From: Macrostomum lignano
Lineage: Eukaryota
Direction of reading: 5' to 3'
Assembly: GCA_002269645.1 (NCBI GenBank)
Contig: NIVC01004157.1
Location: 1 to 57,553 of the forward strand
Length of the DNA stretch: 57,553 nt
Part shown: piece after piece, positions 5,990 to 47,700 of the stretch
How positions within the stretch are numbered: position 1 is the stretch's first letter
Layout of the letters: every line of letters begins with the position of its first letter
Notes under the pieces: generated by a model
Seen by the model: the letters and a program-made list of their open reading frames with translations, nothing else
Databases searched by the model: none
Told to the model about the DNA's origin: nothing
Position numbers and translations under genes: made by a program

Positions 5990-7538
5990 TACGAAGCCAA
6001 AGTGTCCTTCCAGAGCAGAGGCAAAGTCACTTTTAAGCGATGCAAGCACCCAAAAGGTCATTTTTGTTCGCATATGGCTCATAAGTTGATATTATGTGGG
6101 GGGAGGTCACCTGACCCCCGTGACCCCAGTAACTGTCCACACTACACAACGAAGCAGCGCGCATTTAGCCGGTGGGTGGGAGGTCAAGAAGATCCAAAAA
6201 GGGGGGCGGAGGGGGGTGGGCCTCTATTCTGGCAAAAAATGCTTCGTGCGGAAGAAGGGAGGTGGCCCACCTGTGGTATGTGCGCATATAAAGTATATTT
6301 CATTTCACACACATTGGCCATAGACACTGCCCCTGTTAACCCTGCGTTCTAAAGCTAATATAAGGAGAGCAAATATAAAGGAAATGAATGTTAACATCGG
6401 CATGGCAAGAGCCCGCTACCAAGCTTGAGATTACTAATCATAATTCACCTGGACTTCGAGTTGGTAACGGAAGTCGGATGTAACACCACCCCCACCCCCC
6501 CGCCCCCTTCTCGGTCTGCTTCAACCCATCTCATTGCAATGCATTGTTTTAAAACAGAAGCAGGGCCAGCCGATAGAGATTTGAAAGTATTCAATTAAAA
6601 AAGATAAAAAACGCTACTTTTGCTACTGAAAACGAGTAGACGAGCGCATTTTACACAAAGCTACAGTAATAAGTGACAAGTCCAGTATGTGTGGTCAGAC
6701 CAGAGAACAAAGCAAACTTATTCAGCGAGTCAAATTTTCTACAGTCTAACAAAGCCCGCCTGAGCTTTCCTAGAAATACTTCAGTACAGCACGACTTTCA
6801 CGTTGGCTGCCTTCTAAAGAGACCCGTAGTATTGATTGGGATCTGGGGGATCTGCTCCCGCCACCTCCACTTCGTCTCCGCGCAGGAATCCCCAGGACAA
6901 TCGGGCAGCCAGCTGCTGCCGGGGCTTAACTCCGCGACTTAGGCAGCATTTTCAAGACCCGCCGGCCCCCCTGCCCATTGTTTATCCTCATATTCGGGTC
7001 CGCGTGGACTTCAAATTCGATATTTAAGAGTAATAAAATTGTGTCTGTTTTGAACACATGGAATTTTAGTTCAATTTTTTCAAACCGAAAATCTGCCCAA
7101 AATCACTTTGATTGGCTGATCGCAGGGATGGCCGAGCAGTCTGGTGAGAGGTCCTAGGCTCGATTTTGAGAGCCTTAGTTAATCTGGTGGCACCTGTTCC
7201 CGGGGACTGCTGCCGGGGGATAATCCGGACTGGATTAACCAGACCCGGTACAACAGCCATGCCCGCCAAGGTTTGCTATGAGAGGTGCAGCAGAAGTCGC
7301 TGCAGTTGCTGCTGCAGTCACTTTTCTCCGGCCCCTGCAGCTCTCTCGCAGGCAATCTGCTCCTCTACTCACCAAGGTAAGCAAGGGCTGCATTCGCCTT
7401 ATAACTGCTTTCATAGGCCTGTGTGGCGGGTGTCGAACTTGGGACTTCCGTACCGGGCAAACCCCGATGCAGAGCCTCAGATGCTGTAGAGTCGTATTGA
7501 TTTTTACTGCCTGGGACAAGGTTTAGGAGAGGCTCAGC

Positions 7539-8433
7539 CACAGAATATACACAGAATGGTGAATCAGCGCTTAAACTACTTATCGGAATAAAATGTTCAT
7601 AGACTACTAATCATGAGGTGGCGAAAAGTAGTGCAATTAAATTGACGTAGATTAAGCTAAGCGCCCTAGGCTATATGTATTAAAAGTTAAAAGTCAATGT
7701 AAAGAGATAAGGATAAGCGTAAAAGACTTTTCGATTAGCTTGTGCTGCTTGCACGTGTATTTTTTGATAACATTGAATTAGAATTAACATTGAATTGAAG
7801 AATGTAGGAATTAATTGAATAAGAATTAATTGAAGAATTTAAGAATTAACATGATTAACATTAAATTAGAATTTGCTTATTGCGCCCATTCGCTTGAACT
7901 TTTTTATTTCGTCCGATTTTTCGAGAGCAACTGATCGGCCTCGCTTCCTTTGCTGCGCGATCTCTCATTACTCTTGCCTAGCAGGTCGGCACGAAAAATT
8001 CTCTTCGCCCAATCTTCGCATCTAAAGCGCAATATTGTATTTCTATGTCAACTTATCTAATTTACACTACTTGCAATTGTAATGGCTCTTACCGACTTCT
8101 ATCCGCTGGAAAGCGATGGAAGCGCGTCTGCGGTGGGCACTTATTTGCGCAGTGCGGGCAACCGTAAGCTGCGCATTGGATCTTGGATTTTGTCTTAGCA
8201 TTCATGCTGCCGCTTGCTATCGAAAATATTGCATCGGCTGACAGCTCCACAGAGTATACACAGTATATACAGTATATTCTGTGGACAGCTCACCTAACCG
8301 CTGTCTATGGCACTAGCTGCCTAAATCTACTACTTATCACGCGCCTCATCATTAGCAGCATATTGCGAATATAGTTTCGGAGCAAGATTTTTTTTGCGAG
8401 AGAGCTAATTCACCATTCTGTGTATATTCTGTG
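7539..8433. mobile_element. Non-autonomous DNA transposon (895 bp), P-superfamily-like
   Basis: 26-bp perfect TIR CACAGAATATACACAGAATGGTGAAT (extends imperfectly to ~32 bp). 8-bp TSD GGCTCAGC at 7531-7538 and 8434-8441. No ORF. Confidence 0.85.
8248..8283. mobile_element. 36-bp remnant of the same TIR family with its own 8-bp TSD (probable excision footprint)
   Basis: GACAGCTC + CACAGAGTATACACAG-TATATACA-GTATATTCTGTG + GACAGCTC. Confidence 0.75.
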
Positions 8434-8454
8434 GGCTCAGCAGCCCAGCCAGCC

Positions 8455-10085
8455 CAGCCACCGCATCTCCTGCCGCCTAGCACCCTCCACTCCAGCCCCC
8501 CCCCCCAGCCACCGCATCTCCTGCCGCCTAGCACCCTCCACTCCAGCCCCCCCCCAGCCACCGCATCTCCTGCCGCCCAGCCACCGCCTCTCCTGCCGCC
8601 TAGCACCCTCCACTCCAGCCCCCCCAGCCACCGCATCTCCTGCCGCCTAGAACCCTCCACTCCAGCCCCCCCCCAGCCACCGCATCTCCTGCCGCCCCAG
8701 CCACCGCATCTCCTGCCGCCCAGCACCCTCCACTCCAGCCCCCCCCAGCCACCGCATATCCTGCCGCCCAGCCACCGCATCTCCTGCCGCCCCAGCCACC
8801 GCCTCTCCTGCCGACTAGCACCCTCCACTCCAGCCCCCCCCCCAGCCACCGCATCTCCTGCCGCCCAGCCACCGCCTCTCCTGCCGCCTAGCACCCTCCA
8901 CTCCAGCCCCCCCCCCAGCCACCGCATCTCCTGCCGCCTAGCACCCTCCACTCCAGCCCCCCAGCCACCGCATCTCCTGCCGCCTAGAACCCTCCACTCC
9001 AGCCCCCCCCAGCCACCGCATCTCCTGCCGCCCAGCCACCGCATCTCCTGCCGCCCCAGCCACCGCCTCTCCTGCCGACTAGCACCCTCCACTCCAGCCC
9101 CCCCCCCCAGCCACCGCATCTCCTGCCGCCCAGCCACCGCCTCTCCTGCCGCCTAGCACCCTCCACTCCAGCCCCCCCCCAGCCACCGCATCTCCTGCCG
9201 CCTAGCACCCTCCACTCCAGCCCCCCCCCAGCCACCGCATCTCCTGCCGCCTAGAACCCTCCACTCCAGCCCCCCCCCAGCCACCGCATCTCCTGCCGCC
9301 TAGCACCCTCCACTCCAGCCCCCCCCCAGCCACCGACCGCATCTCCTGCCGCCTAGCACCCTCCACTCCAGCCCCCCCCAGCCACCGCATCTCCTGCCGC
9401 CCAGCCACCGCCTCTCCTGCCGCCTAGCATCCTCCACTCCAGCCCCCCCCAGCCACCGCATCTCCTGCCGCCTAGAACCCTCCACTCCAGCCCCCCCCCA
9501 GCCACCGCATCTCCTGCCGCCTAGAACCCTCCACTCCAGCCCCCCCCCAGCCACCGCATCTCCTGCCGCCTAGCACCCTCCACTCCCCCCCCCCAGCCAC
9601 CGCATCTCCTGCCGCCTAGCACCCTCCACTCCAGCCCCCCCCCAGCCACCGCATCTCCTGCCGCCTAGCACCCTCCACTCCAGCCCCCCCCCCCAGCCAC
9701 CGCCTCTCCTGCCGCCCAGCCACCGCCTCTCCTGCCGCCCAGCCACCGCCTCTCCTGCCGCCTAGCACCCTCCACTCCAGCCCCCCCCCAGCCACCGCAT
9801 CTCCTGCCGCCTAGCATCTCCACTCCCCCCCCCCAGCCACCGCATCTCCTGCCGCCTAGCACCCTCCACTCCAGCCCCCCCCAGCCACCGCATCTCCTGC
9901 CGCCTAGCACCCTCCACTCCAGCCCCCCCCCAGCCACCGCATCTCCTGCCGCCCAGCCACCGCCTCTCCTGCCGCCTAGCACCCTCCACTCCAGCCCCCC
10001 CCCCAGCCACCGCCTCTCCTGCCGCCCAGCCACCGCATCTCCTCCCGCCCAGCCACCGCCTCTCCTGCCGCCCAGCACCCTCCAG
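8455..10085. repeat. C-rich minisatellite, ~48-bp unit with shorter sub-units (CAGCCACCGCATCTCCTGCCGCCTAGCACCCTCCACTCCAGCCCCCCC)
   Basis: Visible tandem units. Confidence 0.95.
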
Positions 10086-10741
10086 TCCCGCAGAACCGCC
10101 TCACCGCCACAGTATCTGGGGTTTAAATACGAGTACTTTATTAATATTTCTTTACTCAATAGCAAAATTATTGATAGCAGGACCTTTATAATACTACGAG
10201 TATTAGGCCGCTAATTTTACTGAATTGTTAGATCCTTATTACTTTAATCTGTTGAAGCATTGGAAGGTGTAGAAGGCTATACAGTCCATCTCCCATTCAA
10301 TGAAGTCCCTGATTCCTACTCTTCCCGAGAATGAATGAATAATTAACCAAAATCCCACTCCAAGACTCCACTGTCCGCTTTTTTAAATATTCAAAACAAA
10401 TATTCCAAAACAACTCAGCCAAAGAGTTTTAGAACTGCATGGTGTCTGTGCTGCAGATGCGGGAACTCGCGTCTCAGATGTACAATTGGGGGGAAAAAGG
10501 TTGCAGTCGGTGAATTTCATTACAGCTGCTCCATCTGAATTTCCCTGGCTTAAAGTGGAGCGCGGCTGGGGCAGAAGCTTCACGGAATAAAAGCTCCGGC
10601 TCTGTCCGGGCAGGGCGCGGTGAACTAAACCTGCTGCCTATAGTGAAGTCAGATCAGAAAATCGCAAACAGTCCAACCCTGTAGCAAGAATTTCGTATGC
10701 TCAGTGGCGGTAAAACTCTCTTGCGGCTGAAGATACTTCTT

Positions 10742-14824: not shown

Positions 14825-18704
<3,880 letters not shown>

Positions 18705-18965: not shown

Positions 18966-21380
18966 GACAGATCAGCATCAATTCTGCATCAGATCAGCAT
19001 CAGCATCAGCATCAGCATCAGCATCAGCATCAGATCAGCATCAGATCAGCATCAGATCAGCATCAGCATCAATTCTGCATCAGATCAGCATCAGCATCAG
19101 CATCAGATCAGCATCAGATCAGCATCAGATCAGCATCAGATCAGCATCAGATCAGCATCAATTCTGCATCAGATCAGCATCAGATCAGCATCAAATCAGC
19201 ATCAGATCAGCATCAGATCAGCATCAGATCAGCATCAAATCAGCATCAGATCAGCATCAGATCAGCATCAGATCAGCATCAGATCAGCATCAGATCAGCA
19301 TCAGATCAGCATCAGCATCAATTCTGCATCAGATCAGCATCAGCATCAGCATCAGATCAGCATCAGATCAGCATCAGATCAGCATCAGCATCAATTCTGC
19401 ATCAGATCAGCATCAGATCAGCATCAATTCTGCATCAGATCAGCATCAGATCAGCATCAGATCAGCATCAGATCAGCATCAGATCAGCATCAATTCTGCA
19501 TCAGATCAGCATCAGATCAGCATCAGATCAGCATCAGATCAGCATCAATTCTGCATCAGATCAGCATCAGCATCAGCATCAGCATCAATTCTGCATCAGA
19601 TCAGCATCAGCATCAGCATCAGCATCAATTCTGCATCAGATCAGCATCGGCATCAGCATCAATTCAGCATCAATTCAGCATCAGCATCAATTCTGCATCA
19701 GATCAGCATCAGCATCAATTCTGCATCAGATCAGCATCAGCATCAGCATCAGCATCAATTCTGCATCAGATCAGCATCGGCATCAGCATCAATTCAGCAT
19801 CAATTCAGCATCAGCATCAATTCTGCATCAGATCAGCATCAGCATCAGCATCAGCATCAATTCTGCATCAGATCAGCATCAGCATCAATTCTGCATCAAT
19901 TCAGCATCAGCATCAATTCTGCATCAGCATCAATTCTGCATCAATTCTGCATCAGCATCAATTCTGCATCAGCATCAGATCAGCATCGGCATCAGCATCA
20001 ATTCAGCATCAATTCTGCATCAGCATCAATTCTGCATCAATTCTGCATCAGCATCAATTCTGCATCAATTCAGCATCAATTCTGCATCAATTCTGCATCA
20101 GCATCAATTCTGCATCAATTCTGCATCAGCATCAATTCTGCATCAATTCTGCATCAGCATCAATTCTGCATCAGCATCAATTCTGCATCAGCATCAATTC
20201 TGCATCAGCATCAATTCTGCATCAATTCTGCATCAGCATCAATTCTGCATCAGCATCAATTCTGCATCAATTCTGCATCAGCATCAATTCTGCATCAGCA
20301 TCAATTCTGCATCAGCATCAATTCTGCATCAGCATCAATTCTGCATCAGCATCAATTCTGCATCAATTCTGCATCAGCATCAATTCTGCATCAGCATCAG
20401 ATCAGCATCGGCATCAGCATCAATTCAGCATCAATTCTGCATCAGCATCGATTCTGCATCAGATCAGCATCAATTCTGCATCAATTCTGCATCAGCATCA
20501 ATTCTGCATCAGCATCAATTCTGCATCAATTCAGCATCAGCATCAATTCTGCATCAATTCTGCATCAGCATCAATTCTGCATCAGCATCAATTCTGCATC
20601 AGCATCAATTCTGCATCAATTCTGCATCAGCATCAATTCTGCATCAGCATCAGATCAGCATCGGCATCAGCATCAATTCAGCATCAATTCTGCATCAGCA
20701 TCAATTCTGCATCAATTCTGCATCAGCATCAATTCTGCATCAATTCTGCATCAGCATCAATTCTGCATCAGCATCAATTCTGCATCAATTCTGCATCAGC
20801 ATCAATTCTGCATCAGCATCAATTCTGCATCAATTCTGCATCAGCATCAATTCTGCATCAGCATCAATTCTGCATCAATTCTGCATCAGCATCAATTCTG
20901 CATCAGATCAGCATCAGATCAGCATCAGCATCAATTCTGCATCAGCATCAATTCTGCATCAATTCAGCATCAGCATCAATTCTGCATCAGCATCAATTCT
21001 GCATCAATTCTGCATCAGCATCAATTCTGCATCAATTCTGCATCAGCATCAATTCTGCATCAGCATCAATTCTGCATCAATTCTGCATCAGCATCAATTC
21101 TGCATCAATTCTGCATCAGATCAGCATCAGATCAGCATCAGATCAGCATCAGCATCAATTCTGCATCAGATCAGCATCAGCATCAATTCTGCATCAGATC
21201 AGCATCAATTCAGCATCAAATCAGCATCAGCATCAATTCAGCATCAATTCAGCATCAATTCAGCATCAAATCAGCATCAAATCAGCATCAATTCAGCATC
21301 AATTCAGCATCAATTCAGCATCAGCATCAATTCAGCATCAATTCAGCATCAATTCAGCATCAATTCAGCATCAGCATCAG
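18966..21380. repeat. Modular low-complexity satellite built from GCATCA, GATCA and ATTCT/ATTCA modules
   Basis: Directly visible. The 896-aa and 820-aa ORFs are repeat translations. Confidence 0.95.
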
Positions 21381-21459
21381 CAGACAGGCAGACAGACAGA
21401 CACACTAAAACAGACAGACAGACAGACAGACAGACAGATAGACAGACAGACAGACAGAC

Positions 21460-32736: not shown

Positions 32737-35700
32737 TCACTCGCTCTCGCTGTCACTAAAAACCGCTGTTCTCCTCCTGGCGGCAGCCGCTGCTCGCCGT
32801 TTGCTGCCGCCGCGTGCGGCGCCCGACGGTCCGGCGCCATCAGCTGCCGGAGCGGCCGCAGCAGCAGCAGCCGCGTTGGCGCCACTGGCCGCCGCGCTGG
32901 ACCGCTTGCGCCGGTGGTGCGCCTTCTTGGCGGCCTTCTCGGCGGCTTTCTCGGCCCGCTCCATGGCCTCCTCGTTGTCCACCTGCTTGAGGTGAAACTC
33001 CTCGATCTTGGCGTTCAGCTCAGCCAGGCAGCCGGCGAGGTCGCCAGGGCCTCCGCCGGCGGCAGCGGCTGCGGCAGCGGCGGCGGGGCCCTGAGGCGCG
33101 GCCCGGCCGGCGTTGGCGGCGATGGCCTTGAAGCAGTTGTACACCTCGGTCTCGTGCAGCTTGTCAGCCAGAGTGCAGATGTGCTCCAGCAGCTTGCGCA
33201 GCATCCGCTCGCTGTAGGTCATCAGGTTCAGGCAGTAGGCGAAGTCGCGCCACTGCCGGGGCTGCTCGGCGCTGCGCAGGCGGATGCACAGCTTCTCCAC
33301 CAGCTGCTCGCAGTGGCGGTCGCCCCGGATCAGGGGGAACAGGAAGTCGCAGATTTCCTGCGCGGGTTCCACCCCTAGGGACCCAAAATGGACAAATAAT
33401 GCATTTTCAGAATCTAATGACAAAATAGTGCATTCTTGGTGCATTATATGTACGTGCATTTTTAATGCATTTTTAGTAAAAGTTCTATCTACACTATTTA
33501 ACAAAATAAGCATGAATTTAGTTCAAGATTGGCTTTATTGCGCATCTGTGTATTTATAAATTATACTTCCGTTGCTAACTTTGAAGAACAAATAATAAAA
33601 CGTGGTGCGATAAAAATGCATTATTTTCTGTAACAATTATCAAATTACAAATGCATTTTTTATATCCAGCCGTAGCGAATTAGACCATCACAAATTGAAA
33701 TTAAAATGGCGGTCTAATTGCGTGCTGGATTATTTTGTTGCTCGAAGCGAAATTCGTAATTAAATTTCTATTTCAGGTTCTTATCTAGCAAACAAACTTA
33801 CATTCGTACGCAAAAATTGGGTCGCTTTTGTTATTTCTCTATAACATAGCTTGTTCAATCGATTTTGATTGTCGAAATAAAAGCTTTGTTTTCTTCACTA
33901 TTTTATGACATCCTCTCAACAATTTAATTGCATTAATCAATCTGGTGTGACAATTATTCCAATTTCTAATTATTCCAATTCAGTTAATATATTATTATTA
34001 TAGGTTTGAATTTATTGACTTCAGACACTAAGAGTTGGTGGATCTTGAATGGATCTTGCGGCTGGTTCAAGTAGGCGCTCTTCGAATAGAGTAGTGAAAC
34101 CAGTGCAACGATTGGCAAATTCTGCTGCGTCATTTTATGATTCGAAGTACCTACTATTCTTCATTCGAAAGACAAGAACTTATCATAACTTTTCCCGTGG
34201 CAGTCTTGCACTTAGCCATAATGAGCCTGATGTGAAATTCATTTTTGTAAGTAATTTTTTGCTTACTTACTAGGCCCAGGCCTAATCCTAGTAATTGTTA
34301 CAAATGCTATTGCATATTGTATACAAAATTCTGCAGGATTTGAAAAAATAAATAAATTGCTTGAGTGCATATGGCTTAAAATGAATGTAGTTTTGTGTGC
34401 CTAACTATCAAATATCTATTAACTCCTACAAATATATTTATTAGGGCCTAAAGTTAAATGAAGCTAAATAGTTTTTTATATTGTTTTACTAGTAGGCTGG
34501 GCTTCTATAGCCATATGCCTAGTTTAGGCCATGTAGGGAGTAGGCCCTGATGCCCAACTATAGAACTAGTTAGGTATTTTTTAGTGAATTAGGCTTATTC
34601 TAAGATTTCATCTTTTTATAGTTTTAGTAATACTAGGCCAAGGCTGTTTAATTTGCAAAAGACTACTTTTTAGTGCTTGAAATAGGCTGTTTAGTTGCTA
34701 TCAATGTTAGAGTATGATTAGCTAACTCATGCATAAAGAACTATGGTTGGTTTGGCTAGCTTTCCTTTCTTTTCTATATGTTCTCTATTCTAAGTATAGA
34801 GAGAATATATTGGGCTGTTAGGAAAATTCTGTCCGTTTTGACTAAAATATGTTGGAGCGAGTTTTTATAGGAATGCAGCAGTGTTACTCAGTAAAATAAT
34901 TGCCATCGCAATCGATGACCCTCTGCCAACGAGAGGGCAGACTTTGGATGCCAGCTCTGTAGAAATCCTTGGGCTGTGATTCAAAAAAGTTAGTAATGCA
35001 GTCCTTGACCCCTTTGTCATCTTCAAACGTTTTCTCTTTCAGATGATGGTGCAGCGCTCGAAAAAGATGGTAGTCTGTAGGGGCCAGATCGGGGCTGTAC
35101 GGTGGGTGGGGCAGCACTTCCCAGCCCAGATCCAGCAGCTTTTGTCGGGTCAAATTGGCGGTGTGCGGCCGAGCGTTGTCATGAAGGAAGCGAACATGCT
35201 GACGCCCTGGACGCTGTGTGCGGAGGCAGTCGGCCACATTCTGCAGCTGGTTACAGTAGAGCTCGGCGGTGATGCTGGTGTTGGGCGGCAGCAGCTCGAA
35301 GTATACAACTCCTTCACTGTCCTACCAACAGCAGAGCATCACCTTCTTAGGGTGCAGTGGGGCCTTTGGCTCTGGCTGTGGCGGTTTGCCGGCATCAACC
35401 CACTGGCGCTTGCGGTGTATATTAACGTACATCACCCACTTCTCATCGCCAGTGAGTATTGAGGCCAGCCAGTCTGTTGTTCTCTTGTAGGAGAGCAGTG
35501 AGGTGCAAATGTCTGCTCGGCTTTGACGGTCCCTGTCAGTCAGGTCATGGGGGGTCCACTGTCCGAGCTTGCTTTTCTTGCCCATGGCAGCCAGGTGTTC
35601 AGCGACTTGCACATGGGAGCACCCAAGAGTGGCTGCCAGCTCTCGTGTAGTCTGGTGCGGATTGGCCTCCACAAGTGTCCGCAGCAGCTCAGTGTCTATC

Positions 35701-38700
35701 TCAGATGGGCGTCCAGGGCGAGGTTCGTCAGCAAGGCTGTAGTCGCCGCTGCGAAAGCGATCAAACCAACGACGGGCTGTGCGGTCAGAGACAGCATCCT
35801 GGCCAAATGCACTGCACAGGCGTCGAGTCGATTCGGCTGCTGTAATACCTGCTAGAAAATCATATAGCATGCACTGCCTTAGAGCGATGCTGTTTAATTC
35901 AAAATTTCTGGCCATAATTGGGCGCTGAAAAGCAAATGACTTGGTTAGAATGACCACAACTCTGGCTGTATATGCATACACAAGTATTGGATCCAACACA
36001 GCTTCATGATCCTCTGCATAGAAAAATAAAAAACGGACAGAACTTTCCTAACAACCCAATAGAATTTTGGCCATTTTTAAATGTCTTATTGTCTATTTTT
36101 TTAATATATATTTTGTATAATGTATTCATTTTCAAACTTGACTGCCTTCATTGATTTTTATAACATTTTATATAGTGGTCTCAGTATGTTTATATATCTA
36201 TTTATCTATGAGCTATTTTATTCCTATGCTAAGCCTAAGGTGTTCAATTCATAGGAAGGTCTATTTGCTGATAAGGTAGGCCCTATATTCTATCCAATAG
36301 CAAGTTTACTATTTGAACTATTGTCCAGTGCTTTAGTTTTCTATTTTAATATTTCTTATACTTTTAGTTTTCCTAGTATTTTAATAGGCTATATTTGCCA
36401 ACTCTATTAAGCTATCTAAAGTTTTATTTTAGTTAAGTTTGTCTATTTTTCCAATGGATTTATTCTCTTTAGCTTGTCTATCTTTCTAAAGGACTCTTTT
36501 GTTTAGTTTGTCTAACTTTCTAATAGGCTATATCTATTTTGTTAACTATTCTAAAAAGAATTTTCTATTTAGTTTGTTTATAATTCTTAATTAAAAAATT
36601 AATTTGGTCTAATATTAGCTCAAAATCTAATAATGAATCACATTTTTATTTTAGGGTGAGGACTACCCACTTGCTCTCAAGGATGGCATTTTCAATGGCA
36701 TGTTCATTGCAGCTGAACCATGGTCAAAAATGATCTACCTTGAGAAGGAGCTTGATGCATTCATAACTGAAAACAAGGAGAACTCCGAGCTCTCTGATCA
36801 TGTCCAGTCTCATATGAAAGTCTTCATGAGACAACAAGAAGACTCAAGTGATGAAGATGCAGGTGATATTGACGATTCGGATGATGATGAGACCTGGCAG
36901 CCTACTCCGCCTCCTACTCAGGTTTCTTTTGTAAGCCCAAGTCCAGTTTCGACACCTACAGCTGCTCATTCTCGTGCTAGGAAGCAATCTCAAGGCAGTC
37001 TAGCAAACAAGCGGCCAAGGACAGCTGGTACTCATGTTGAAGACAGACACCAAAATTCTGAGGCATCATTGGCTTTAATTGCAAGTGAGGAACAGCGTGC
37101 CTTACCACCGGAACTACTTCCTCAAGTTCTTCAGGCTCATGAATCAGCAAAGGCAGCAAGTGCAAACGATCCCACAAATTCCAAGCCTCTCACACTGGCT
37201 GAATTTCAGGAAGGAATGGGTAAGGTTTAATTATTTCTTTCTTGTGCTTTTGTTTTTATGCTTTATTCTCATTATCTCAGTGTAATACAACTTTTTTACT
37301 CACAAATCCTGCATTTCGTGCTGCTTATGTAATCACTATCAGTATAGTACAAATGTGAAACACCAAATGTTTCAGACAGTTTGAAGCGGTTCATCGCTCA
37401 CAAACTGAGGAAGATTCGCACTTCATCATCCAGCTTGCATCAAATGGTATCAGCTGATTTCCTTAAGGAGGTAGGTTTCTCAGTTTCTGTGCAAATTAAT
37501 TTACTTTCTTTACTAACCATTTACTATAAAATTATTATATGCTTTACTTTGCCATTTTACTTTACTGTTTTTCTTATTTTTCGCTCTTCTTCATGTGGCT
37601 TGACGTTTTCACATTTCACTGACATTTATCATGACATAATCCAAACAATCGGTCCTGAGTACCAATTTTCTTTGTACTTTTTCGTAGGAATTTGAAGGCC
37701 ACGATGGGCGAGTTTGCAATTTCTCAGATCTGCCTCGTACAACGACGTCGAAGTTCATCAGGGCATATGCTTCTGCGAGGTATGGCGTCGAGTATGTGCA
37801 ATCGCATGTTTTCGGAGAGTACAAAGGCACGACACAAAGGCCAAAGGCTCCAGGAGAAGTGCAAGACCATCTTAAGAGTAAGCGATACAATTTCTTTGCA
37901 ACTGAATGTTTTTTGGCAACTGACTTAGTATTGTGGGCATTAGATGGATGCAGGTCATTCTATATAGTCTTTTAAAGCTAAAAATTCAAACTGGCTCACT
38001 GTAGCCATTCCATTGTTGGAAAATGTTTGTGTGAATTTGCTGCTACTATAAAATCTTTCTTAAAAAAAACTAGGCATTCTGAACAAGGCCTTCAATATCC
38101 CGAGGGATCAAACGGTTTCTGCGTGGACAGCCGTCAAAGACTCTCTGAATCGACTTGGTCCAGAGTCAACCTTCCGCAAGCGAAAGGCCGGTGATTAGAC
38201 TGACGGCTAAACGTGTGTCGCAATATTTTAACTGAAGATGCAATCACCCAACTGCCATTCGACATGTAACAAACTATAACGTTTTTGAACTGAATCGATC
38301 CCTATTTTACGTTATCTGCGCTAAAGTCAAACTCTTACTCTGTAGTGTTTTTTTAATATAAAATGAAGCGACTACCTTAATTATTTTTTTAGAATAATAA
38401 CTGTTGCGTTTGAAAAGTGTTGGCACTCTTTGTATGGGTAGTTAGGATACCCTTAATGATTTCCGTAGTCGTTCAAAATGTATATATGTGGAAGAATCTA
38501 AACTCCTTCAACTTTAACGCCACCGAGCTAATTTATTCCACTTCATTTCATATTTATCGATAGATGATGGTGCACATTCTTATTTCGATGGCACGGGTAC
38601 GTAATTTTCTCCAAACTTTTCAGTCTATCCTAACACTCGTAGAACTGAAGTTGAAATTATGAGTTCGTCGTCGGAAAGTCTGTCCTCTGGGTCGTCGGAA

Positions 38701-41700
38701 AGTCTGTCCTCTGGGTCGTCGGAAAGTCTGTCCTCTGGGTCGTCATATGTCTCGATGTCGGTTGATTCAAGTACACATTCGATTGACACATCCATGGGTG
38801 AATACAGCGATTCGAGCTCTTCCGCTGCAATTCAAGCAAACGTCGGCGAGCAACCGACTATTGCAATTCCTGCTGATGACGAGAATGAAGTGCAGGCAGC
38901 TGGTCCATCTGATATCGAGCACCCTGAAATATTTTCTGCGGATGAGGATAGTAACCTTCTTTCTGTCTTTTGTATCCAAGGTATCTCTATGGAGGTCAAA
39001 TGTGCCCTTCTAATGTTGTGGATGATCTTGTCGAACGTTTCCAAGAAAGCTGTTAAAAACATGCTTCGCCTCATTTCCATTCTGTCTCCTCGCGCTGCTT
39101 TACCTACATCTTACAAAGCAATGGAAGCGGTTCTGCTTCGTTCATTCATTTTAAAACCGGACTTCGTTGTGAAAGTTTGTTTAGCGTGTCTACTTATAAA
39201 CTGTAGTGAACATCCAGTCGACTCTTTCGAGGGACTATGGCTCTTAAATGTAAACCATCAGGTGGAGCTTACAGTTGAAAGGCATTTAAATGATATTTTA
39301 TCTTACCAGCGTGAGCTAAGGCGAGGATTTCAAACTGACATTCTGAACTCTGCTGTTAGCAATGAACTAGAAACCGGCTCATCTCCTGACATTTTTCACT
39401 TGTATTTTCTTCTTTCGGCTGACGGAGCAAACTTCTTTAAAGTTTCTGAAATGTCTGTGTGGCCTTTCTGTGCACTGTGCCTCAATTTGCCTGTTAGATT
39501 ACGCCAGAAGTTTGTCAACATTATCACAATCGCTTTGTTTACCAATCGAGGAAAGCCGAATTTTGAAAAGTTTTTGCCTACTATTTTAAATCGCTTGCCT
39601 TCGTGTGTAAAAGTAAGGAATGTGACGTTTTTTCTTCACTTCTCGTTTTTTACCTGCGATTTGCCCGCTTTATCTCACCTTTTTGGAATCAAGCAATTCA
39701 ACGGACAATTTGCTTGTCCCAGATGCATCCTACCTGGCAAGTCTCTAAAGGTGTCAGAAAAAGGCCAAGTTCGTGTCTTCCCCGCTGTCCATGGAATTCC
39801 GCTTCGAACTAATGCCATGCATGCGCAGCATCTCACAGTTCTCAAGGCTCAAGGGCTTAAGGATTATTTTGGAATCAAACGCGAAACTGCTCTTCTCAAA
39901 ATCATTCGTTTTCCAGAAAATTTCATTGTTGATTCTATGCATTGTCTCTGGGAAGGTCAAGTAAAACACATTCTAGCCTTCTTGACTGATTCTAAGACTA
40001 AAAGCTGCAATCCCAATCATTACCGTGTGCTAGGCTCAGCATCTGTCAATGTAATCGACTCTCAGATTATGCAACTGAAACTTCCCCAAGGTATTAGCAA
40101 TGTTCCTCCAATTAGTCAGCTCTCACTTTGGAAAGCGAAAACATACAAGATTTTTGCTCTGTATCTGTTTCCATCAATTCTGCTTCCACGAATCGAAAAT
40201 CCCGAACTTAGGGGCCTGCTCCTTCTTCTTAATTCTATTTATAACTTGCTGTACTCGCAAAATTCTTGTGTTTCAACTTTAAAACGTCTGTGCAATATGT
40301 TTCTTAACCTGTGTCCTGAGTTTTTTGGCGAACGTGTTATGCTTCTTAATTTTCATCTTCTCTATCATCTACCCGACCAGTATGAACGATTTGGTCCTCT
40401 GTATTGTGCATCAATGTTTCCCTTTGAGTCAGCTATGCATGGCTTTAATATGCTTCATTTTGGCAGTCGATTTCATGGAAAGCAAATTTCCGAAAAGTTT
40501 TTCTGGCTAAAAGTGCTATTGTATTCACTGCAACCTGCTGCAGGCTCCAATCCCTCAATTTCTGATGCACTCCTTGTCATCGCTAAGCACTACTGCAATC
40601 CTCCTGAGCGCGAAAATCGAACTCTAGGCGCTTCTGGGGGTAAAATTTTAACAACCACTTCTGCGGATTGCACTTTAAAAACATGTAGTTCGTATGTCCT
40701 GGATGTATCAAATTCATATTTTGCTATTAATCATTTTGCCGATAGCAAAATCTTTGGCTCTTTTCTGACTCCACAATGTCGTTTAATCGACTTACTGTTC
40801 AATGCTGTTCCGGATTTTACCAATATTGGTGCTAGTGCATCTGAACAAGCAATCTTTCTTGCTTTTTTTACATCTGATGTTCCACTCCGAAATATGCTTA
40901 TCTTTACGAGTCAGGAACCCACTCGGGAAAATTACAATTGCATACGTCTCACTGATGTGGCTGCGAGGTGCATTCGAGTCGATGTCAACTTTCCGAACTT
41001 GCCATCAGGCAGTTTTTGTCTGGTACCCCTGTTGGAAGAGTGTGAGCACGATTAGCTCAGATAACTTCAAACGCGCGTCAGTTTTTCAGGGTCATTGTCT
41101 TGTCTCGTTTTCTATTCTGTAAGTAGTCCTGGTTGTCAATGTAATCATTGCATGAAATTTTTTCTGGTACGTATTCCTGATTTATCTGCTGGGTAGCTAT
41201 TGTTGTGTAGCTTTTGTCGATGTTAGCCAGCCGATGTGTGTGTGCTAGGCTTATTCTAAAAGCTCTATTGCTAGGACACAGGAAGAAAATATGACTGGGG
41301 AATTAGACGGGACCAAGAAAGAGACACTAACTGGCAAACTTTCGGCTAGCAAACGCCGGCTGGCTAACATCGTAGACCCAGTACCATCTAGTACTTGTAC
41401 TTAAGCAAGCTTTGTTTCTTGTTAGTTTTTCTAAACTAAAAAGCCCTTTTTCACAAAACATGCGCGCCTAATGCTCAGCTATATTTATCCTACATGTTAT
41501 GTTTTACGTTTTCTCTCATATGCCGTGCGCTTTGTTTAGATACACCTAATTCTTTGTCACATTTTTGCAGTTTTTTATGTTTAATTGCTTTTACGTAAAA
41601 CTCCGGGGACACAAATTTTTTTTTTACATTTGGCTTCTTTGTTTGGTAATAAATATTACATTTTCGGCTCACTCACTTAGTTGAGACCTGTCTTATACAT

Positions 41701-44700
41701 AAAACTAACCAATTGTGTTATTTTGAGTGTGTCTTATTGTGTGTACATCGCCCATGGTTTGGTAAGACAAACCAGAATAGAACTAAGTACGGTTTTAATG
41801 AGCCGATTTAAACGAAGGTACGAAGTGCAATGTATTCATATATATACGAGTATATATGGCTCGCAAGATGACTAAAAATGCATTATTTCTAATTAATTGC
41901 AACCACATTATAAATGCATTTTATATATATAGAATTTGCATTATAATGGCAATTATAATGCCATTAAGTGGCAATTATAATGCCATTAAGTGGCATTCAA
42001 TGTCATTATAATGGCCAGTAAAAATGCATTATTTACCCATTATGGGTCCCTAGGGACGGTTGACGGCGATTTACAATGGAGCTTTGTGGCCACTATGGGC
42101 TTGCTTCAGGGCCACTATGGGCTTGCTTCAGGGCCACTATGGGCTTGCTTCAGGGCGACTATGGGCTTGCTTCAGGGCGACTATGGGCTTGCTTCAGGGC
42201 GACTATGGGCTTGCTTCAGGGCCACTATGGGCTTGCTTCAGGGCGACTATGGGCTTGCTTCAGGGCGACTATGGGCTTGCTTCAGGGCCACTATGGGCTT
42301 GCTTCAGGGCGACTATGGGCTTGCTTCAGGGCGACTATGGGCTTGCTTCAGGGCGACTATGGGCTTGCTTCAGGGGTGACTATGGGCTTGCTTCAGGGCG
42401 ACTATGGGCTTGCTTCAGGGCGACTATGGGCTTGCTTCAGGGCCACTATGGGCTTGCTTCAGGGCGACTATGGGCTTGCTTCAGGGCGACTATGGGCTTG
42501 CTTCAGGGCCACTATGGGCTTGCTTCAGGGCGACTATGGGCTTGCTTCAGGGCGACTATGGGCTTGCTTCAGGGCGACTATGGGCTTGCTTCAGGGGTGA
42601 CTATGGGCTTGCTTCAGGGGTGACTATGGGCTTGCTTCAGGGGTGACTATGGGCTTGCGTCAGTGAGACTATGGGCTTGCTTCAGGGGCGACTATGGGCT
42701 TGCTTCAGGGCCACTATGGGCTTGCTTCAGGGCCACTATGGGCTTGCTTCAGGGCCACTATGGGCTTGCTTCAGGGGATACTATGGGCTTGCTTCAGGGG
42801 ATACTATGGGCTTGCTTCAGTGAGACTATGGGCTTGCTACAGGACCACTATGGGCTTGCTTCAGTGCCACTATGGGCTTGCTTCAGGGCCACTATGGGCT
42901 TGCTTCAGGGCCACTATGGGCTTGCTTCAGGGGTGACTATGGGCTTGCTTTAGGAGTGACTATGGGCTTGCTTCAGGGCGACTATGGGCTTGCTTCAGGA
43001 GTGACTATGGGCTTGCTTCAGGGGTGACTATGGGCTTGCTTCAGGGGTGACTATGGGCTTGCTTCAGGGCGACTATGAGCTGGCTTCAGTGAGACTATGG
43101 GCTTGCTTCAGGGGACACTATGGGCTGCCTGAGGGGACATTATGGGCTGCCTCAGAGGATATTAAGTGCTGCCTCAGGGAGGTTATGGGGTTGCTTTAAA
43201 TATGACTTGTGCGGCAGTTGATTTCCGGAGCATCGCGTGTTACCTTGAAGTGATCCTCATGGGTCTCGGCATCGCTCAGTCTGTTAATGATATCCGGCAG
43301 CACATTGTACAGCGCGTTGCCCTTGTTAGACAGCTCGGAGAAGAACAGCTTGGCCAGGTGGGCAATGCGGGACTGCGAGTCGCAGATGCAGGTGGTCATC
43401 TCGCTGATCTGGCCTTTCACCTTGATCATGTCGTTCAGGATGAGGTGGCTCAGGGTGTTCAGCGCGTTTAGCCGGACCCTGGCGCTGGAGTCCCGCAGGC
43501 GGCCGTAGAGGCTGGCGGTCCAGGGCTCCACCAGATTGGGGAACCGCTTGGCCAGGTCGCCAAGGGCAACGATGAGGTTGGCGCGGATCACCTCCGATTG
43601 GCTCTTCTCGGCCAGGGTGAACAGCAGGCCGAGGTGCTGCTCGCAGAACTTGCCGGACACCAGCATGAGCTTGGCCAGGGCCAGGCTGGCCGCGGCTTGC
43701 AACTGCTCGGACTGGAAGCTGGCCGGCTGCTCGCACACGTGCACAATCAGCGGGGCCAGGTGGCTCAGCAGGTGGCGCTCGTCGTACAGCAGCACGTCGT
43801 CGAGCAGGCGGCGGATCTGCTCAGCCTCCTGGTCGTCCGCCGAGGCACCTTCCAGGCCGAGCTCGTCCTCAGCTGAGGCCGGCTGGACGCTCTGTGGGAG
43901 TGAAACCGGAGTGAGTGAAGAGTGAGTGAACAGGAGTGAGTGAAGAGTGAGTGAACAGGAGTGAGTGAAGAGTGAGTGAACCGGAGTGAGTGAAGAGTGA
44001 GTGAACCGGAGTGAGTGAAGAGTGAGTGAACCGGAGTGAGTGAAGAGTGAGTGAACAGGAGTGAGTGAAGAGTGAGTGAACCGGAGTGAGTGAAGAGTGA
44101 GTGAACCGGAGTGAGTGAAGAGTGAGTGAACAGGAGTGAGTGAAGAGTGAGTGAACAGGAGTGAGTGAAGAGTGAGTGAACCGGAGTGAGTGAAGAGTGA
44201 GCGAACAGGAGTGAGTGAAGAGTGAGTGAACAGGAGTGAGTGAAGAGTGAGTGAACCGGAGTGAGTGAAGAGTGAGTGAACAGGAGTGAGTGAAGAGTGA
44301 GTGAACCGGAGTGAGTGAAGAGTGAGTGCACAGGAGTGAGTGAAGAGTGAGTGAACCTGAGTGAGTGAAGAGTGAGTGAACAGGGGTGAGTGAAGAGAAT
44401 TTCAAAGGAGTGACTCAAAAGTGAGCAGGAACACAAATTCCGAATCCCAGCTTCCAACCCCCAGTGAAAACCTTCCGCTTCGAGGCCTTCACAGCCGACG
44501 CCCGGCCGGTCTCCCCGCCTTTGTTGGCTTCCTTCAGCGCCGTCCGGCGTTTCAGCTCGGCCAGCACAGCCACCTCCAGGTGCACCAGCACCTTCAGGGC
44601 CACGTGACCGACCAGGGCCACGAACTTGGCCAGCATGCTGGACGCCAGGGTCAGCGACGGTTGCGGCGCTTCTGGACCATCGTCCGACATCTCGACAGCA

Positions 44701-47700
44701 GCGTCCGCGGCCTCGGCGTCGGCGTCGTCCAATTGAATGGCATCCGCAGGTTCCGCGGTCGCAGCCGCCGCCGCCGCCGTGACAGATTTCCTGCGGCTGC
44801 AGTCAAGCAGCAGGCGGGCCATGCGGCGGATCAGCGAGGCGGCCAGCTGGTCCGGACTGTCGGCCAGGGTGTAGATCACCGACACCGCCTGAGGACAGTG
44901 ATTGGGCTGGCTGGACTGCGCTTTTGCTTGGCTTTGCTACTCATAGTAGGATGCGGCTATATGTAGCGTCATTCTGCTCGGGGCTCAGGCTGCTGAGGGA
45001 CTGGAGAGGGCAGAGCACAGGCTGCTGAGGGACTGGAGAGGGCAGAGCACAGGCTGCTGAGGGACTGGAGGGGGCAGAGCACAGGCTGCTGAGGGACTGG
45101 AGGGGCAGAGCACAGGTTGCTGAGGGACTGGAGAGGGCAGAGCACAGGCTGCTGAGGAACTGGAGGGGGCAGAGCACAGGCTGCTGAGGGACTGGAGGGG
45201 GCAGAGCACAGGCTGCTGAGGAACTGGAGGGGGCAGAGCACAGGCTGCTGAGGGACTCGAGGGGCAGAGCACAGACTGCTGAAGGACTGGAGAGGGCAGG
45301 GCACTCTGCTGAAGGAAATGATTCAATGGAAACAAAGGAAAGAAGCTGAGTCAGGCCAGCAGAGAATCCGGACCTGCTCCATCATGGGCATCCAGAACCG
45401 GCTCTCCCCAGACGCGGACGACACAATGATGTCCAGCAGTCGCTGGAACAGGTCGCTTTCTGTCGGCATCCGGCAGGACTCGGGCGCGGCAGCGACGCCG
45501 GAGCCAGCGGCGGCATTGGCGGCAGATTTGGCTTTGGCCGGCGTGGCGGCCATCCGCTGGAGGGCCACGCAGGTGTACTGCACCAGCTGCAGGTCGGTGC
45601 AGTCGGCGCAGAGGCCCTCGCTGACCAACAGCTGGGTGTTCGCCCGCACGATGCCGGGCTCCTCGGCGGCCATCATGCCGAGCAGAATGACGGCGGCGCG
45701 CCGGTCCTGGCTGGAGTTTCCGGCCCGACGGGCGAACTTGTCCCAGGCTCCCTGTGCAGAATGGGATTATTATGGCGCTTGAAGTGGCTTCATGTGTCGG
45801 TGAATGTGTCGGTAAAACTGTCGGTAAGTGTGACAGTAAAATTGTCGGTGAATGTGTCGGTAAAATTGTCGGTAAGTGTGTCAGTAAAATTGTCGGTGAA
45901 TGTGTCGGTAAAATTGTCGGTAAGTGTGTCAGTAAAATTGTCGGTGAATGTGTCGGTAAAATTGTCGGTGAATGTGTCGGTAAAATTGTCGGTAAGTGTG
46001 TTAGTAAAATTGTCGGTGAATGTGTCGGTAAAATTGTCGGTAAATGTGTCGGTAAAATTGTCGGTGAATGTGTCGGTAAAATTGTCGGTGAATGTGTCGG
46101 TGAATGTGTCAGTAAAATTGTCGGTAAGTGTGTCAGTAAAATTGTCGGTGAATGTGTCGGTAAAATTGTCGGTGAATGTGTCGGTAAAATTGTCGGTGAA
46201 TGTGTCGGTAAAATTGTCGGTGAATGTGTCGGTGAATGTGTCAGTAAAATTGTCGGTAAGTGTGTCAGTAAAATTGTCGGTGAATGTGTCAGTAAAATTG
46301 TCGGTGAATGTGTCAGTAAAATTGTCGGTGAATGTGTCGGTAAAATTGTCGGTGAATGTGTCGGTGAATGTGTCAGTAAAATTGTCGTAAGTGTGTCAGT
46401 AAAATTGTCGATGAATGCGTCGGTAAAATTGTCGGTAAATGTGTCGGTAAAATTGTCGGTGAATGTGTCGGTAAAATTGTCGGTAAGTGTGTCAGTAAAA
46501 TTGTCGGTGAATGTGTCGGTAAAATTGTCGGTAAGTGTGTCAGTAAAATTGTCGGTGAATGTGTCGGTAAAATTGTCGGTGAATGTGTCGGTAAAATTGT
46601 CGGTGAATGTGTCGGTGAATGTGTCAGTAAAATTGTCGGTGAATGTGTCAGTAAAATTGTCGGTGAATGTGTCGGTAAAATTGTCGGTGAATGTGTCGGT
46701 AAAATTGTCGGTGAATGTGTCGGTGAATGTGTCAGTAAAATTGTCGGTGAATGTGTCAGTAAAATTGTCGGTGAATGTGTCAGTAAAATTGTCGGTGAAT
46801 GTGTCAGTAAAATTGTCGGTGAATGTGTCAGTAAAATTGTCGGTGAATGTGTCGGTAAAATTGTCGGTGAATGTGTCGGTGAATGTGTCAGTAAAATTGT
46901 CGTAAGTGTGTCAGTAAAATTGTCGATGAATGTGTCGGTAAAATTGTCGGTAAATGTGTCGGTAAAATTGTCGGTGAATGTGTCGGTAAAATTGTCGGTG
47001 AATGTGTCGGTAAAATTGTCGGTGAATGTGTCGGTGAATGTGTCAGTAAAATTGTCGGTAAGTGTGTCAGTAAAATTGTCGGTGAATGTGTCAGTAAAAT
47101 TGTCGGTAAATGTGTCGGTAAAATTGTCGGTGAATGTGTCGGTAAAATTGTCGGTGAATGTGTCGGTAAAATTGTCGGTGAATGTGTCGGTGAATGTGCC
47201 AGTAAAATTGTCGGTAAGTGTGTCAGTAAAATTGTCGGTGAATGTGTCGGTAAAATTGTCGGTAAATGTGTCGGTAAAATTTTCGGTGAATGTGTCGGTA
47301 AAATTGTCGGTGAATGTGTCGGTAAAATTGTCGGTGAATGTGTCGGTGAATGTGTCGGTAAAATTGTCGGTGAATGTGTCGGTAAAATTGTCGGTGAATG
47401 TGTCGGTGAATGTGTCAGTAAAATTGTCGGTAAGTGTGTCGGTAAAATTGTCGGTGAATGTGTCGGTAAAATTGTCGGTGAATGTGTCGGTGAATGTGTC
47501 AGTAAAATTGTCGGTAAATGTGTCGGTAAAATTGTCGGTGAATGTGTCGGTAAAATTGTCGGTGAATGTGTCGGTGAATGTGTCAGTAAAATTGTCGGTA
47601 AATGTGTCGGTAAAATTGTCGGTGAATGTGTCGGTAAAATTGTCGGTGAATGTGTCGGTGAATGTGTCGGTAAAATTGTCGGTGAATGTGTCGGTAAAAT

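What the first reader, a model, noticed from the sequence alone, without database searches (positions are those of the whole stretch)
8240..8291. 36-bp two-ended remnant with its own TSD, the shape of a P-element excision footprint
16 nt of the left TIR (1 mismatch), 8 nt of filler that looks locally templated (TATATACA) and 12 nt of the right TIR sit between perfect GACAGCTC duplications, inside an element of the same family. Drosophila P transposase is known to cut in a 17-nt stagger, leaving TIR stubs at the donor site that end-join into footprints of this size. This would be sequence evidence of the same cleavage chemistry, and of self-insertion, in a distant animal.
Basis: partly seen in the sequence, partly recalled or inferred. 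Interest (0 to 1): 0.8.

Follow-up and report, generated by a model that had tools for sequence, protein, structure and literature searches.

The report
Transposon excision scar inside a MITE
A 36-base leftover of a cut-and-paste transposon sits inside another copy of the same family in the flatworm Macrostomum lignano. It has the same layout as the scars fruit-fly P elements leave when they jump out, which hints at, but does not prove, the same deep-staggered cutting in a distant animal.

Summary
An 895-bp non-coding element (7539-8433) has perfect 26-bp TIRs and the 8-bp duplication GGCTCAGC. Inside it lies a 36-bp two-ended remnant (8248-8283) between perfect GACAGCTC copies. The remnant is 16 nt of left TIR (one mismatch), 8 nt of filler and 12 nt of right TIR.

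New here:
- The filler comes from a perfect 9-bp tandem duplication (ACAGTATAT x2) across the junction. That is the mark of synthesis-dependent end joining.
- The window is Macrostomum lignano.
- About 245 kb of non-redundant M. lignano DNA holds a second, different remnant (23 nt, stubs of 7 and 16 nt, 7/8 TSD) and one end of another family member. It holds no second copy of the 36-mer.
- Published Drosophila P junctions have the same layout.

Best reading: an excision scar of a same-family insertion, joined from ends carrying roughly 16-17-nt TIR stubs.

Not shown: that the family belongs to the P superfamily. No transposase was reachable, and hAT and Zisupton also make 8-bp duplications. 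A length cap also cannot be claimed from four stubs. I rate it a new member of a known kind, of moderate interest.

The parts
7531..7538 (.). Left target-site duplication of the host element (GGCTCAGC)
   Evidence: Identical to 8434-8441
7539..8433 (.). Host element: 895-bp non-coding TIR element (MITE-like). It is the only full copy in the window.
   Evidence: Perfect 26-bp TIRs plus a perfect 8-bp TSD. No ORF above 63 aa lies wholly inside. No other copy in the window or the fetched loci.
7539..7564 (+). Left TIR CACAGAATATACACAGAATGGTGAAT. The terminal octamer CACAGAAT occurs twice in it, at positions 1-8 and 12-19.
   Evidence: read directly from the sequence
8408..8433 (-). Right TIR, a perfect reverse complement of the left TIR
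8434..8441 (.). Right target-site duplication of the host element (GGCTCAGC)
7602..7632 (.). Left subterminal block, similar in inverted orientation to 8328-8359. Possible transposase-binding region (inferred).
   Evidence: Alignment A1
8328..8359 (.). Right subterminal block, the inverted partner of 7602-7632
   Evidence: Alignment A1
8240..8247 (.). Left TSD of the lost insertion (GACAGCTC)
   Evidence: Identical to 8284-8291
8248..8263 (+). Left TIR stub, 16 nt, CACAGAGTATACACAG (A7G relative to the host TIR)
8264..8271 (.). Filler TATATACA. TATAT copies the start of the right stub and ACA copies the end of the left stub.
   Evidence: tandem duplication; read directly from the sequence
8260..8277 (.). 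Perfect 9-bp tandem duplication ACAGTATAT|ACAGTATAT spanning the junction. Removing one copy leaves a 27-nt join of the 16-nt and 12-nt stubs sharing one G.
8272..8283 (-). Right TIR stub, 12 nt, GTATATTCTGTG (exact)
   Evidence: (D8, I6)
8284..8291 (.). Right TSD of the lost insertion (GACAGCTC)

Best explanation
A member of the same TIR family once inserted into this 895-bp element and duplicated GACAGCTC. That step is shown.

It was later cut out by its transposase. The cut removed the element but left about 16-17 nt of each inverted repeat on the two donor flanks, as Drosophila P transposase does with its 17-nt 3' overhangs. This step is inferred.

The two non-complementary tails were then joined by alternative end joining. 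Each tail primed a few bases of synthesis on the other: TATAT was copied from the right stub and ACA from the left. The extended ends were ligated. This produced the 9-bp tandem duplication ACAGTATAT and the final 16 + 8 + 12 nt scar between both intact TSD copies. The repair route is inferred from the junction sequence.

The family is most likely a P-type, or P-like-cleaving, non-autonomous family of the flatworm Macrostomum lignano. It was active recently, because its TIRs and TSDs are unmutated.
For: - The anatomy is exact: TSD, 16-nt stub, 8-nt filler, 12-nt stub, TSD.
- The filler is explained entirely by a perfect 9-bp tandem duplication across the junction. Templated inserts of this kind are the signature of polymerase-theta end joining at P-element breaks (PMC2895639).
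- Sequenced Drosophila P{wa} junctions have the same layout, for example acccagac-CATGATGAAATAACAT-TTAACATAAC-ATGTTATTTCATCATG-acccagac, which is 16 nt + 10 nt + 16 nt.
- The 17-nt staggered cut is described as atypical among characterised transposases (PMC7776569; PMC10983969).
- A second remnant lies in the same genome at L012:16550-16572. It is 23 nt with stubs of 7 and 16 nt and a TSD of CTTGGGAG/CTTGCGAG. Its sequence and length differ from the 36-mer, so these are not copies of one mini-unit.
- All four stubs are 16 nt or shorter.
- No two-ended derivative of intermediate length was found in scans up to 8 kb.
- The family's architecture matches P-derived MITEs: 26-bp TIR beginning CA, 8-bp TSD and an unrelated AT-rich interior. 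Anopheles P elements have 27-31-bp TIRs and 8-bp TSDs (PMC1562414; PMC3698922).
- Another family member sits at L014:22306, with 25/26 TIR identity and related subterminal sequence. So the family is multi-copy.
Against: - No transposase of this family was seen. The superfamily is unassigned, and hAT and Zisupton also make 8-bp TSDs (PMC12730594).
- The TIR shares only its first two bases (CA) with the Drosophila P TIR (CATGATGAAATAACAT...) and the zebrafish Pdre2 TIR (CATACCTGTCAAC).
- There are only two remnants, so four stubs.
- The left stub can also be read as 19 nt with two mismatches, which would exceed 17 nt.
- The 16-nt stub of the L012 remnant has two mismatches. It may instead be 7 + 9 filler + 7.
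- The TIR repeats its own terminal octamer at positions 12-19. Stubs that end at position 16 could therefore reflect that sequence rather than a fixed stagger.
- Short-tract gap repair followed by end joining could give the same product in any superfamily.
Confidence: 0.55

Rival explanations
1. The remnant is an internal-deletion relic rather than a direct cleavage scar. A same-family copy inserted here. After a break or an excision, the gap was refilled from a sister or homologous copy for only a few bases from each end and then end-joined. Alternatively the interior was lost by an unrelated deletion. On this reading the stub lengths say nothing about where the transposase cuts, and the family could be hAT, Zisupton or another superfamily.
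For: - Incomplete repair synthesis followed by end joining is the commonest outcome after P excision in wild-type flies (PMC2895639).
- Microhomology-mediated miniaturisation of Tc1/mariner elements into MITEs is listed by title and abstract (PMC3814204).
- The superfamily is untested, and 8-bp TSDs are not unique to P.
- The templated filler shows only that end joining occurred. It does not show the cut position.
Against: - Both remnants keep 16 nt or less on every side.
- If breakpoints were uniform over each half of a roughly 900-bp element, the chance of both falling within 17 nt of the ends is about 0.0014 per remnant. This is my estimate and an inference.
- No intermediate-length two-ended derivatives were seen in about 245 kb.
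- The collapsed junction has only 1 nt of microhomology, which is unlike slippage-type deletions.
Confidence: 0.27
2. The 36-mer, and the 23-mer in L012, are mobile micro-elements. On this reading they are minimal TIR pairs that the family's transposase inserted as such, each creating its own 8-bp TSD. No excision took place here.
For: Each unit has outward-facing ends and its own TSD, which is formally what an insertion looks like.
Against: - There is no second copy of the 36-mer in 445 kb raw (about 245 kb distinct) of the same genome.
- The two units differ in length and sequence.
- They lack the conserved subterminal blocks shared by the full members.
- Drosophila P transposase binds internal sites next to the 31-bp TIRs, not the TIR tips (PMC7776569; PMC1562414).
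- The junction carries a repair-type tandem duplication.
Confidence: 0.06
3. The structure is a local artefact. On this reading it is a chance palindrome, or a small duplication or conversion copied from the host element's own right end 150 bp away, and no second insertion occurred.
For: - The 13-mer GTATATTCTGTGG at 8272-8284 is identical to 8422-8434, including the first flanking base (D8).
- The region is AT-rich and partly palindromic (I2).
Against: - Both TIR ends are present in the correct outward orientation and sit exactly between perfect 8-bp direct repeats.
- The chance expectation is negligible.
- An analogous structure occurs at an unrelated locus that has no host element nearby (L012).
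Confidence: 0.03

Closest known systems
Donor-site footprints of the Drosophila melanogaster P element (17-nt 3' overhangs; Beall and Rio 1997 as cited in PMC7776569; junction tables in PMC2895639)
   Same: - Both 8-bp TSD copies are kept.
- Up to 16-17 nt of each TIR is retained, facing outward.
- There is a short AT-rich insert templated from the adjacent stubs.
- There is little or no microhomology at the join.
   Different: - The host is a flatworm, not a fly.
- The TIR sequence is unrelated beyond the first CA.
- The scar is an old genomic relic, not a recovered experimental product.
- The transposase is unknown and the cut position is inferred, not mapped.
P-derived MITEs (Anopheles gambiae P-MITEs, PMC1562414; Drosophila repleta-group BuT5, PMC3698922)
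   Same: Non-coding elements of a few hundred bp to 1 kb with 8-bp TSDs and an interior unrelated to any coding element. The Anopheles P-MITEs take their TIRs from masters with 27-31-bp TIRs, compared with 26 bp here.
   Different: - Those MITEs were tied to an autonomous P master through shared ends. Here no master was found.
- BuT5 has only 3-bp TIRs and 8-9-bp TSDs.
- The word 'footprint' does not occur in the main text of either paper.
hAT, MULE and Transib excision (hairpin on the flanking DNA)
   Same: hAT shares the 8-bp TSD. All are cut-and-paste elements repaired by end joining.
   Different: - Hairpin-type excision (the title and abstract of PMC5499845 group MULE, hAT and Transib as transposing alike) leaves footprints made of flanking or TSD bases with palindromic additions, not TIR stubs. 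That footprint description is my own knowledge.
- The terminal motif here, CACAG, does not fit the hAT YARNG rule. That rule is also my own knowledge.
Synthesis-dependent microhomology-mediated end joining and polymerase-theta templated inserts (PMC2943611, PMC2895639)
   Same: A short direct repeat is created at the junction by copying a few bases from the opposite end before ligation.
   Different: This is a repair pathway, not a transposon family. It explains the filler but not the stub length.

Membership tests
P superfamily of DNA transposons | Transposase with an N-terminal THAP domain, an RNase-H-like catalytic domain and a GTP-binding insertion | not testable with these tools
   There is no autonomous copy in the window or in 18 fetched M. 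lignano loci. A tblastn probe with a P transposase sequence recalled from memory gave nothing. The one further family member (L014:22306) runs off the end of the locus after 125 bp.
P superfamily of DNA transposons | Target-site duplication of 8 bp (7-9 across the superfamily) | tested here: met
   GGCTCAGC and GACAGCTC are perfect, and CTTGGGAG/CTTGCGAG matches 7/8. The alternative of a 6-bp TSD with a 27-bp TIR is excluded by the L012 flanks.
P superfamily of DNA transposons | Terminal inverted repeats of about 13-31 bp that begin CA | tested here: met
   The TIR is a perfect 26 bp beginning CACAG. This feature is not specific, because many superfamilies start with CA.
P superfamily of DNA transposons | Internal transposase (THAP) binding sites or subterminal inverted repeats near the TIRs | tested here: inconclusive
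   An inverted subterminal block of about 30 nt lies 64-94 nt (left) and 75-106 nt (right) from the ends (7602-7632 and 8328-8359). It is partly shared by the L014 member. No THAP motif could be assigned.
P superfamily of DNA transposons | Donor cleavage staggered by 17 nt, leaving TIR stubs of 17 nt or less at excision sites | tested here: inconclusive
   The four stubs, of 16, 12, 16 (two mismatches) and 7 nt, fit this. The sample is too small, and an alternative 19-nt parse exists.
hAT superfamily | 8-bp TSD | tested here: met
hAT superfamily | Terminal motif 5'-YARNG (own knowledge) | tested here: not met
   The terminus is CACAG, so position 3 is C rather than a purine.
hAT superfamily | Excision through flanking hairpins, giving footprints without transposon bases (own knowledge; PMC5499845 listed) | tested here: not met
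   Both remnants are made of TIR bases. This counts against hAT only if the remnants are direct excision products.
Zisupton / KDZ | 8-bp TSD (PMC12730594) | tested here: met
Zisupton / KDZ | KDZ-type transposase | not testable with these tools
   No autonomous copy was available.
Transposon excision footprint (as a class of sequence feature) | Both TSD copies are kept, with only a few element-derived or templated bases between them, at a site where related copies show an empty or a full state | tested here: inconclusive
   The first part is met. The comparison with an empty or occupied allele or homeologue could not be made. The neighbouring genes of the window are not in the protein collection.

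The most novel reading that the evidence does not exclude
The family is not a P element. It belongs to another or an undescribed 8-bp-TSD superfamily, for example a hAT-like or KDZ/Zisupton-like lineage, whose transposase nevertheless cuts about 16 nt inside its ends. If so, deep-staggered donor cleavage, so far mapped only for Drosophila P, would exist outside the P superfamily.
Probability: 0.15. Interest if true: 0.65.

Novelty: new member of a known kind. Interest (0 to 1): 0.4.

Why it matters
The 17-nt staggered cut is the oddest feature of P-element chemistry. As far as the papers read here say, it has been mapped only for the Drosophila enzyme.

Natural scars that keep 16 nt or less of each end in a flatworm family would be cheap, sequence-only evidence that this chemistry is old and widespread. 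They also offer a way to classify orphan MITE families by their scars.

The family looks young, since its TIRs and TSDs are unmutated and it has both inserted and excised. Macrostomum lignano is a regeneration model used for transgenesis, so a native, possibly still active cut-and-paste system could be of practical use there.

Tried and rejected
- **Public DNA collections.** I scanned for the 20-nt TIR. The metagenome collection gave 7 hits, all tandem ACACAGAAT-type repeats with no family identity beyond the pattern. The viral collection gave none.
- **Allelic or homeologous locus.** I tried to reach it through neighbouring genes to test the empty or occupied site. The best condensin hit was 69% identical and not from this genome. 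The glycosyltransferase had no hit. The ankyrin ORF is not on record.
- **Wider genome sampling.** I sampled through multi-copy genes. The DUF1258 element, RPS18 paralogues and others yielded 18 loci. A reconstructed retrotransposon Pol product was not in the collection.
- **P transposase probe.** A tblastn search with a sequence recalled from memory found nothing in the sample.
- **Rfam.** There were no matches in the window.
- **6-bp TSD with a 27-bp TIR (CCACAG...CTGTGG).** Rejected. The L012 remnant has G before CACAG and C after CTGTG.
- **Abutted-ends or circle junction.** Rejected. The ends face outward, as in a mini-element.
- **The 8.7-kb element as the autonomous partner.** The DUF1258 ORF in the window belongs to an unrelated element with CCCTAGGG ends and 2-bp TSDs.
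- **Target-site motif.** Comparison with the P motif ATRGTCCGGACWAT was uninformative with four sites.
- **L008:18600-18660.** The 11-nt TIR match there sits in a cluster of CACAGAA motifs with no right stub. I treated it as chance.

Full report
**Observation.** GACAGCTC lies at 8240-8247. The 36-mer CACAGAGTATACACAGTATATACAGTATATTCTGTG lies at 8248-8283. GACAGCTC recurs at 8284-8291. These sit inside an 895-bp element (7539-8433). Its two ends are a perfect 26-bp inverted repeat, CACAGAATATACACAGAATGGTGAAT, and it is flanked by a perfect GGCTCAGC duplication at 7531-7538 and 8434-8441.

Against that TIR, the remnant's left end matches 16 nt with one mismatch (A7G). Its right end matches 12 nt exactly.

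**Is it more than chance?** I scanned the whole window for CACAG...CTGTG pairs flanked by an 8-bp direct repeat with at most one mismatch. Only the host element and the remnant came back. As an empirical null, I repeated the scan with all 1,024 possible 5-mers as the terminal motif over 445 kb of the same genome. 987 motifs gave nothing. CACAG gave two hits, and both have extended TIR identity. Chance is not a realistic explanation.

**What the filler is.** The 36-mer contains a perfect 9-bp tandem duplication, ACAGTATAT|ACAGTATAT, at 8260-8277. Removing one copy leaves a 27-nt join of the 16-nt left stub and the 12-nt right stub that shares a single G.

Read the other way, the 8-nt filler TATATACA has two parts. 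TATAT is a copy of the first bases of the right stub. ACA is a copy of the last bases of the left stub. This is what results when each broken end primes a few bases of synthesis on the other end, dissociates and is then ligated.

Chan, Yu and McVey describe such templated inserts at Drosophila P-element breaks and attribute them to polymerase theta (PMC2895639; see also PMC2943611).

**Organism.** The window carries animal-type genes. These include a condensin subunit 1 gene on the minus strand, an ankyrin-repeat ORF, a DXD glycosyltransferase and a mariner-like fragment.

The 798-aa DUF1258 ORF at 38659-41055 is 100% identical to a protein found on contigs of assembly GCA_002269645.1. A member of its cluster is GenBank PAA55061.1, labelled Macrostomum lignano. 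Several M. lignano genome papers cite the same accession.

The window shares an 8.7-kb element base-for-base with those contigs. The 'distant animal' is therefore the free-living flatworm M. lignano, or something extremely close to it.

**More of the same genome.** I fetched 18 loci of about 20 kb each through multi-copy or paralogous genes. With the window this gives 445 kb raw and about 245 kb of distinct sequence. That sample holds two further traces of the family.

- **L012:16550-16572.** CTTGGGAG-CACAGAACTGTATATGTTCTGTG-CTTGCGAG is a 23-nt two-ended remnant. It has a 7-nt left stub, a 16-nt right stub with two mismatches, and a 7/8 TSD. No host element lies around it.
- **L014:22306.** CACAGAATATACACAGAATGGCGAAT is the left end of another full-type member. 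TIR identity is 25/26 and the subterminal sequence is related. It runs off the end of the locus after 125 bp.

No second copy of the 36-mer exists in the sample. No two-ended derivative of intermediate length was found in scans up to 8 kb.

The mini-units are not copies of one another. All four stubs (16, 12, 16 and 7 nt) are 16 nt or shorter.

**Mechanism.** The shown steps are these:
- A second insertion by the same family occurred inside this copy.
- Its interior was lost while both TSD copies were kept.
- The join was made by synthesis-dependent end joining.

The inferred step is that the loss was a transposase excision leaving about 16-17 nt of each TIR on the donor flanks. The argument is by analogy. 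Drosophila P transposase cuts with a 17-nt stagger, which reviews describe as atypical among characterised transposases (PMC7776569; PMC10983969). Sequenced P{wa} donor junctions have the same layout. One example is acccagac-CATGATGAAATAACAT-TTAACATAAC-ATGTTATTTCATCATG-acccagac, which is 16 + 10 + 16 nt between both TSDs. In those tables 16 of the 17 nt is often what remains, as here.

By contrast, from my own knowledge, hAT, MULE and Transib excision goes through hairpins on the flanks and leaves no element bases (PMC5499845 is listed). Tc1/mariner leaves 2-3 nt, and piggyBac leaves none.

**Family membership.** This is the weak point. The family has P-like architecture: a 26-bp TIR beginning CA, an 8-bp TSD, and a non-coding interior unrelated to any coding element. 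Anopheles P elements and their MITEs have 27-31-bp TIRs and 8-bp TSDs (PMC1562414; PMC3698922).

An inverted subterminal block lies 64-94 nt from the left end and 75-106 nt from the right end. However, hAT and Zisupton also make 8-bp TSDs (PMC12730594). The TIR shares only its first CA with the Drosophila P and zebrafish Pdre2 TIRs. No transposase of the family could be reached. The terminal CACAG does not fit the hAT YARNG rule (my own knowledge), which counts mildly against hAT.

A 6-bp-TSD reading is excluded by the L012 flanks. Target-site composition, compared with the P motif ATRGTCCGGACWAT (PMC2577343), is uninformative with four sites.

**Caveats on the stub argument.**
- The left stub can also be read as 19 nt with two mismatches.
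- The 16-nt stub in L012 has two mismatches, so that remnant could be 7 + 9 + 7.
- The TIR contains its own terminal octamer twice (CACAGAAT at 1-8 and 12-19). Breaks after position 16 might therefore be driven by sequence.
- Incomplete gap repair followed by end joining is common after P excision in flies. It could give such relics in any superfamily.

Against that rival: if breakpoints were uniform along a roughly 900-bp element, both falling within 17 nt of the ends has a probability of about 0.0014 per remnant. This is my own estimate and an inference. No intermediate-size derivatives were seen either.

**Verdict.** The interpretation as an excision scar with P-like geometry is the best-supported one, at about 0.55. 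Its main rival is a gap-repair relic, at about 0.27. P membership and a 17-nt stagger are not demonstrated.

P-type elements are already known across animals and protists. Zebrafish and human THAP9 are catalytically active. This would therefore be a new member of a known kind, of moderate interest. Interest would rise if the autonomous partner proved not to be a P transposase. The decisive work is a genome-wide census and recovery of the autonomous copy, starting from NIVC01003517.1 at about position 107,896.

Noticed in passing
window 33373-42055: An 8,683-bp DNA transposon with ends CCCTAGGGACCCA[A/T]AATGG and a 2-bp TSD. The TSD is AC here and TA, AA, CG and TT at four other loci. It carries the intact DUF1258 ORF (38659-41055), a 304-aa spliced gene and, on the opposite strand, a mariner-like HTH_48/DDE fragment (35322-35999). 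At least 9 near-identical copies lie on different contigs of GCA_002269645.1, so it was active very recently. The 2-bp TSD suggests a Mirage/CMC-type element; I did not verify that classification.
   Followed up: partly
window 33373 and 42055-43195 (minus-strand condensin gene): The 8.7-kb element lies between the condensin subunit 1 exon at 43196-43795 and the coding sequence that resumes at 33372 and below (VEPAQEICDF...). It abuts that coding sequence directly. It may therefore interrupt an exon of this gene copy rather than an intron. This could be tolerated in a neopolyploid genome.
   Followed up: no
L012:16550-16572: A second two-ended remnant of the CACAG family, 23 nt long with stubs of 7 and 16 nt and a TSD of CTTGGGAG/CTTGCGAG. 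It lies in otherwise unique DNA.
   Followed up: yes
L014:22306-22430 (NIVC01003517.1, about position 107,896): The left end of another family member. TIR identity is 25/26, the candidate TSD is GTTTACAT, and the subterminal sequence is related to the window MITE. It is cut off by the end of the locus after 125 bp. It could be a different MITE or the autonomous copy.
   Followed up: partly
window 7539-7557: The TIR holds its own terminal octamer twice (CACAGAAT at positions 1-8 and 12-19, separated by ATA). This could offer an inner pseudo-end to the transposase.
   Followed up: no
whole window, e.g. 7-1081, 8453-10088, 17605-18434, 18969-21382, 45792-48165: The window is extremely dense in minisatellites and microsatellites, with 68 Tandem Repeats Finder rows. 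Nearly every intron and intergenic stretch is a tandem array. Examples are (ACT)278 and a 24-bp array that stays in frame with a condensin exon within a 732-aa ORF (46373-48571, minus strand).
   Followed up: no
L008:18600-18660: A cluster of CACAGAA motifs that includes an 11-nt match to the TIR tip, with no right stub and no TSD. It is probably low-complexity sequence or a chance match.
   Followed up: partly
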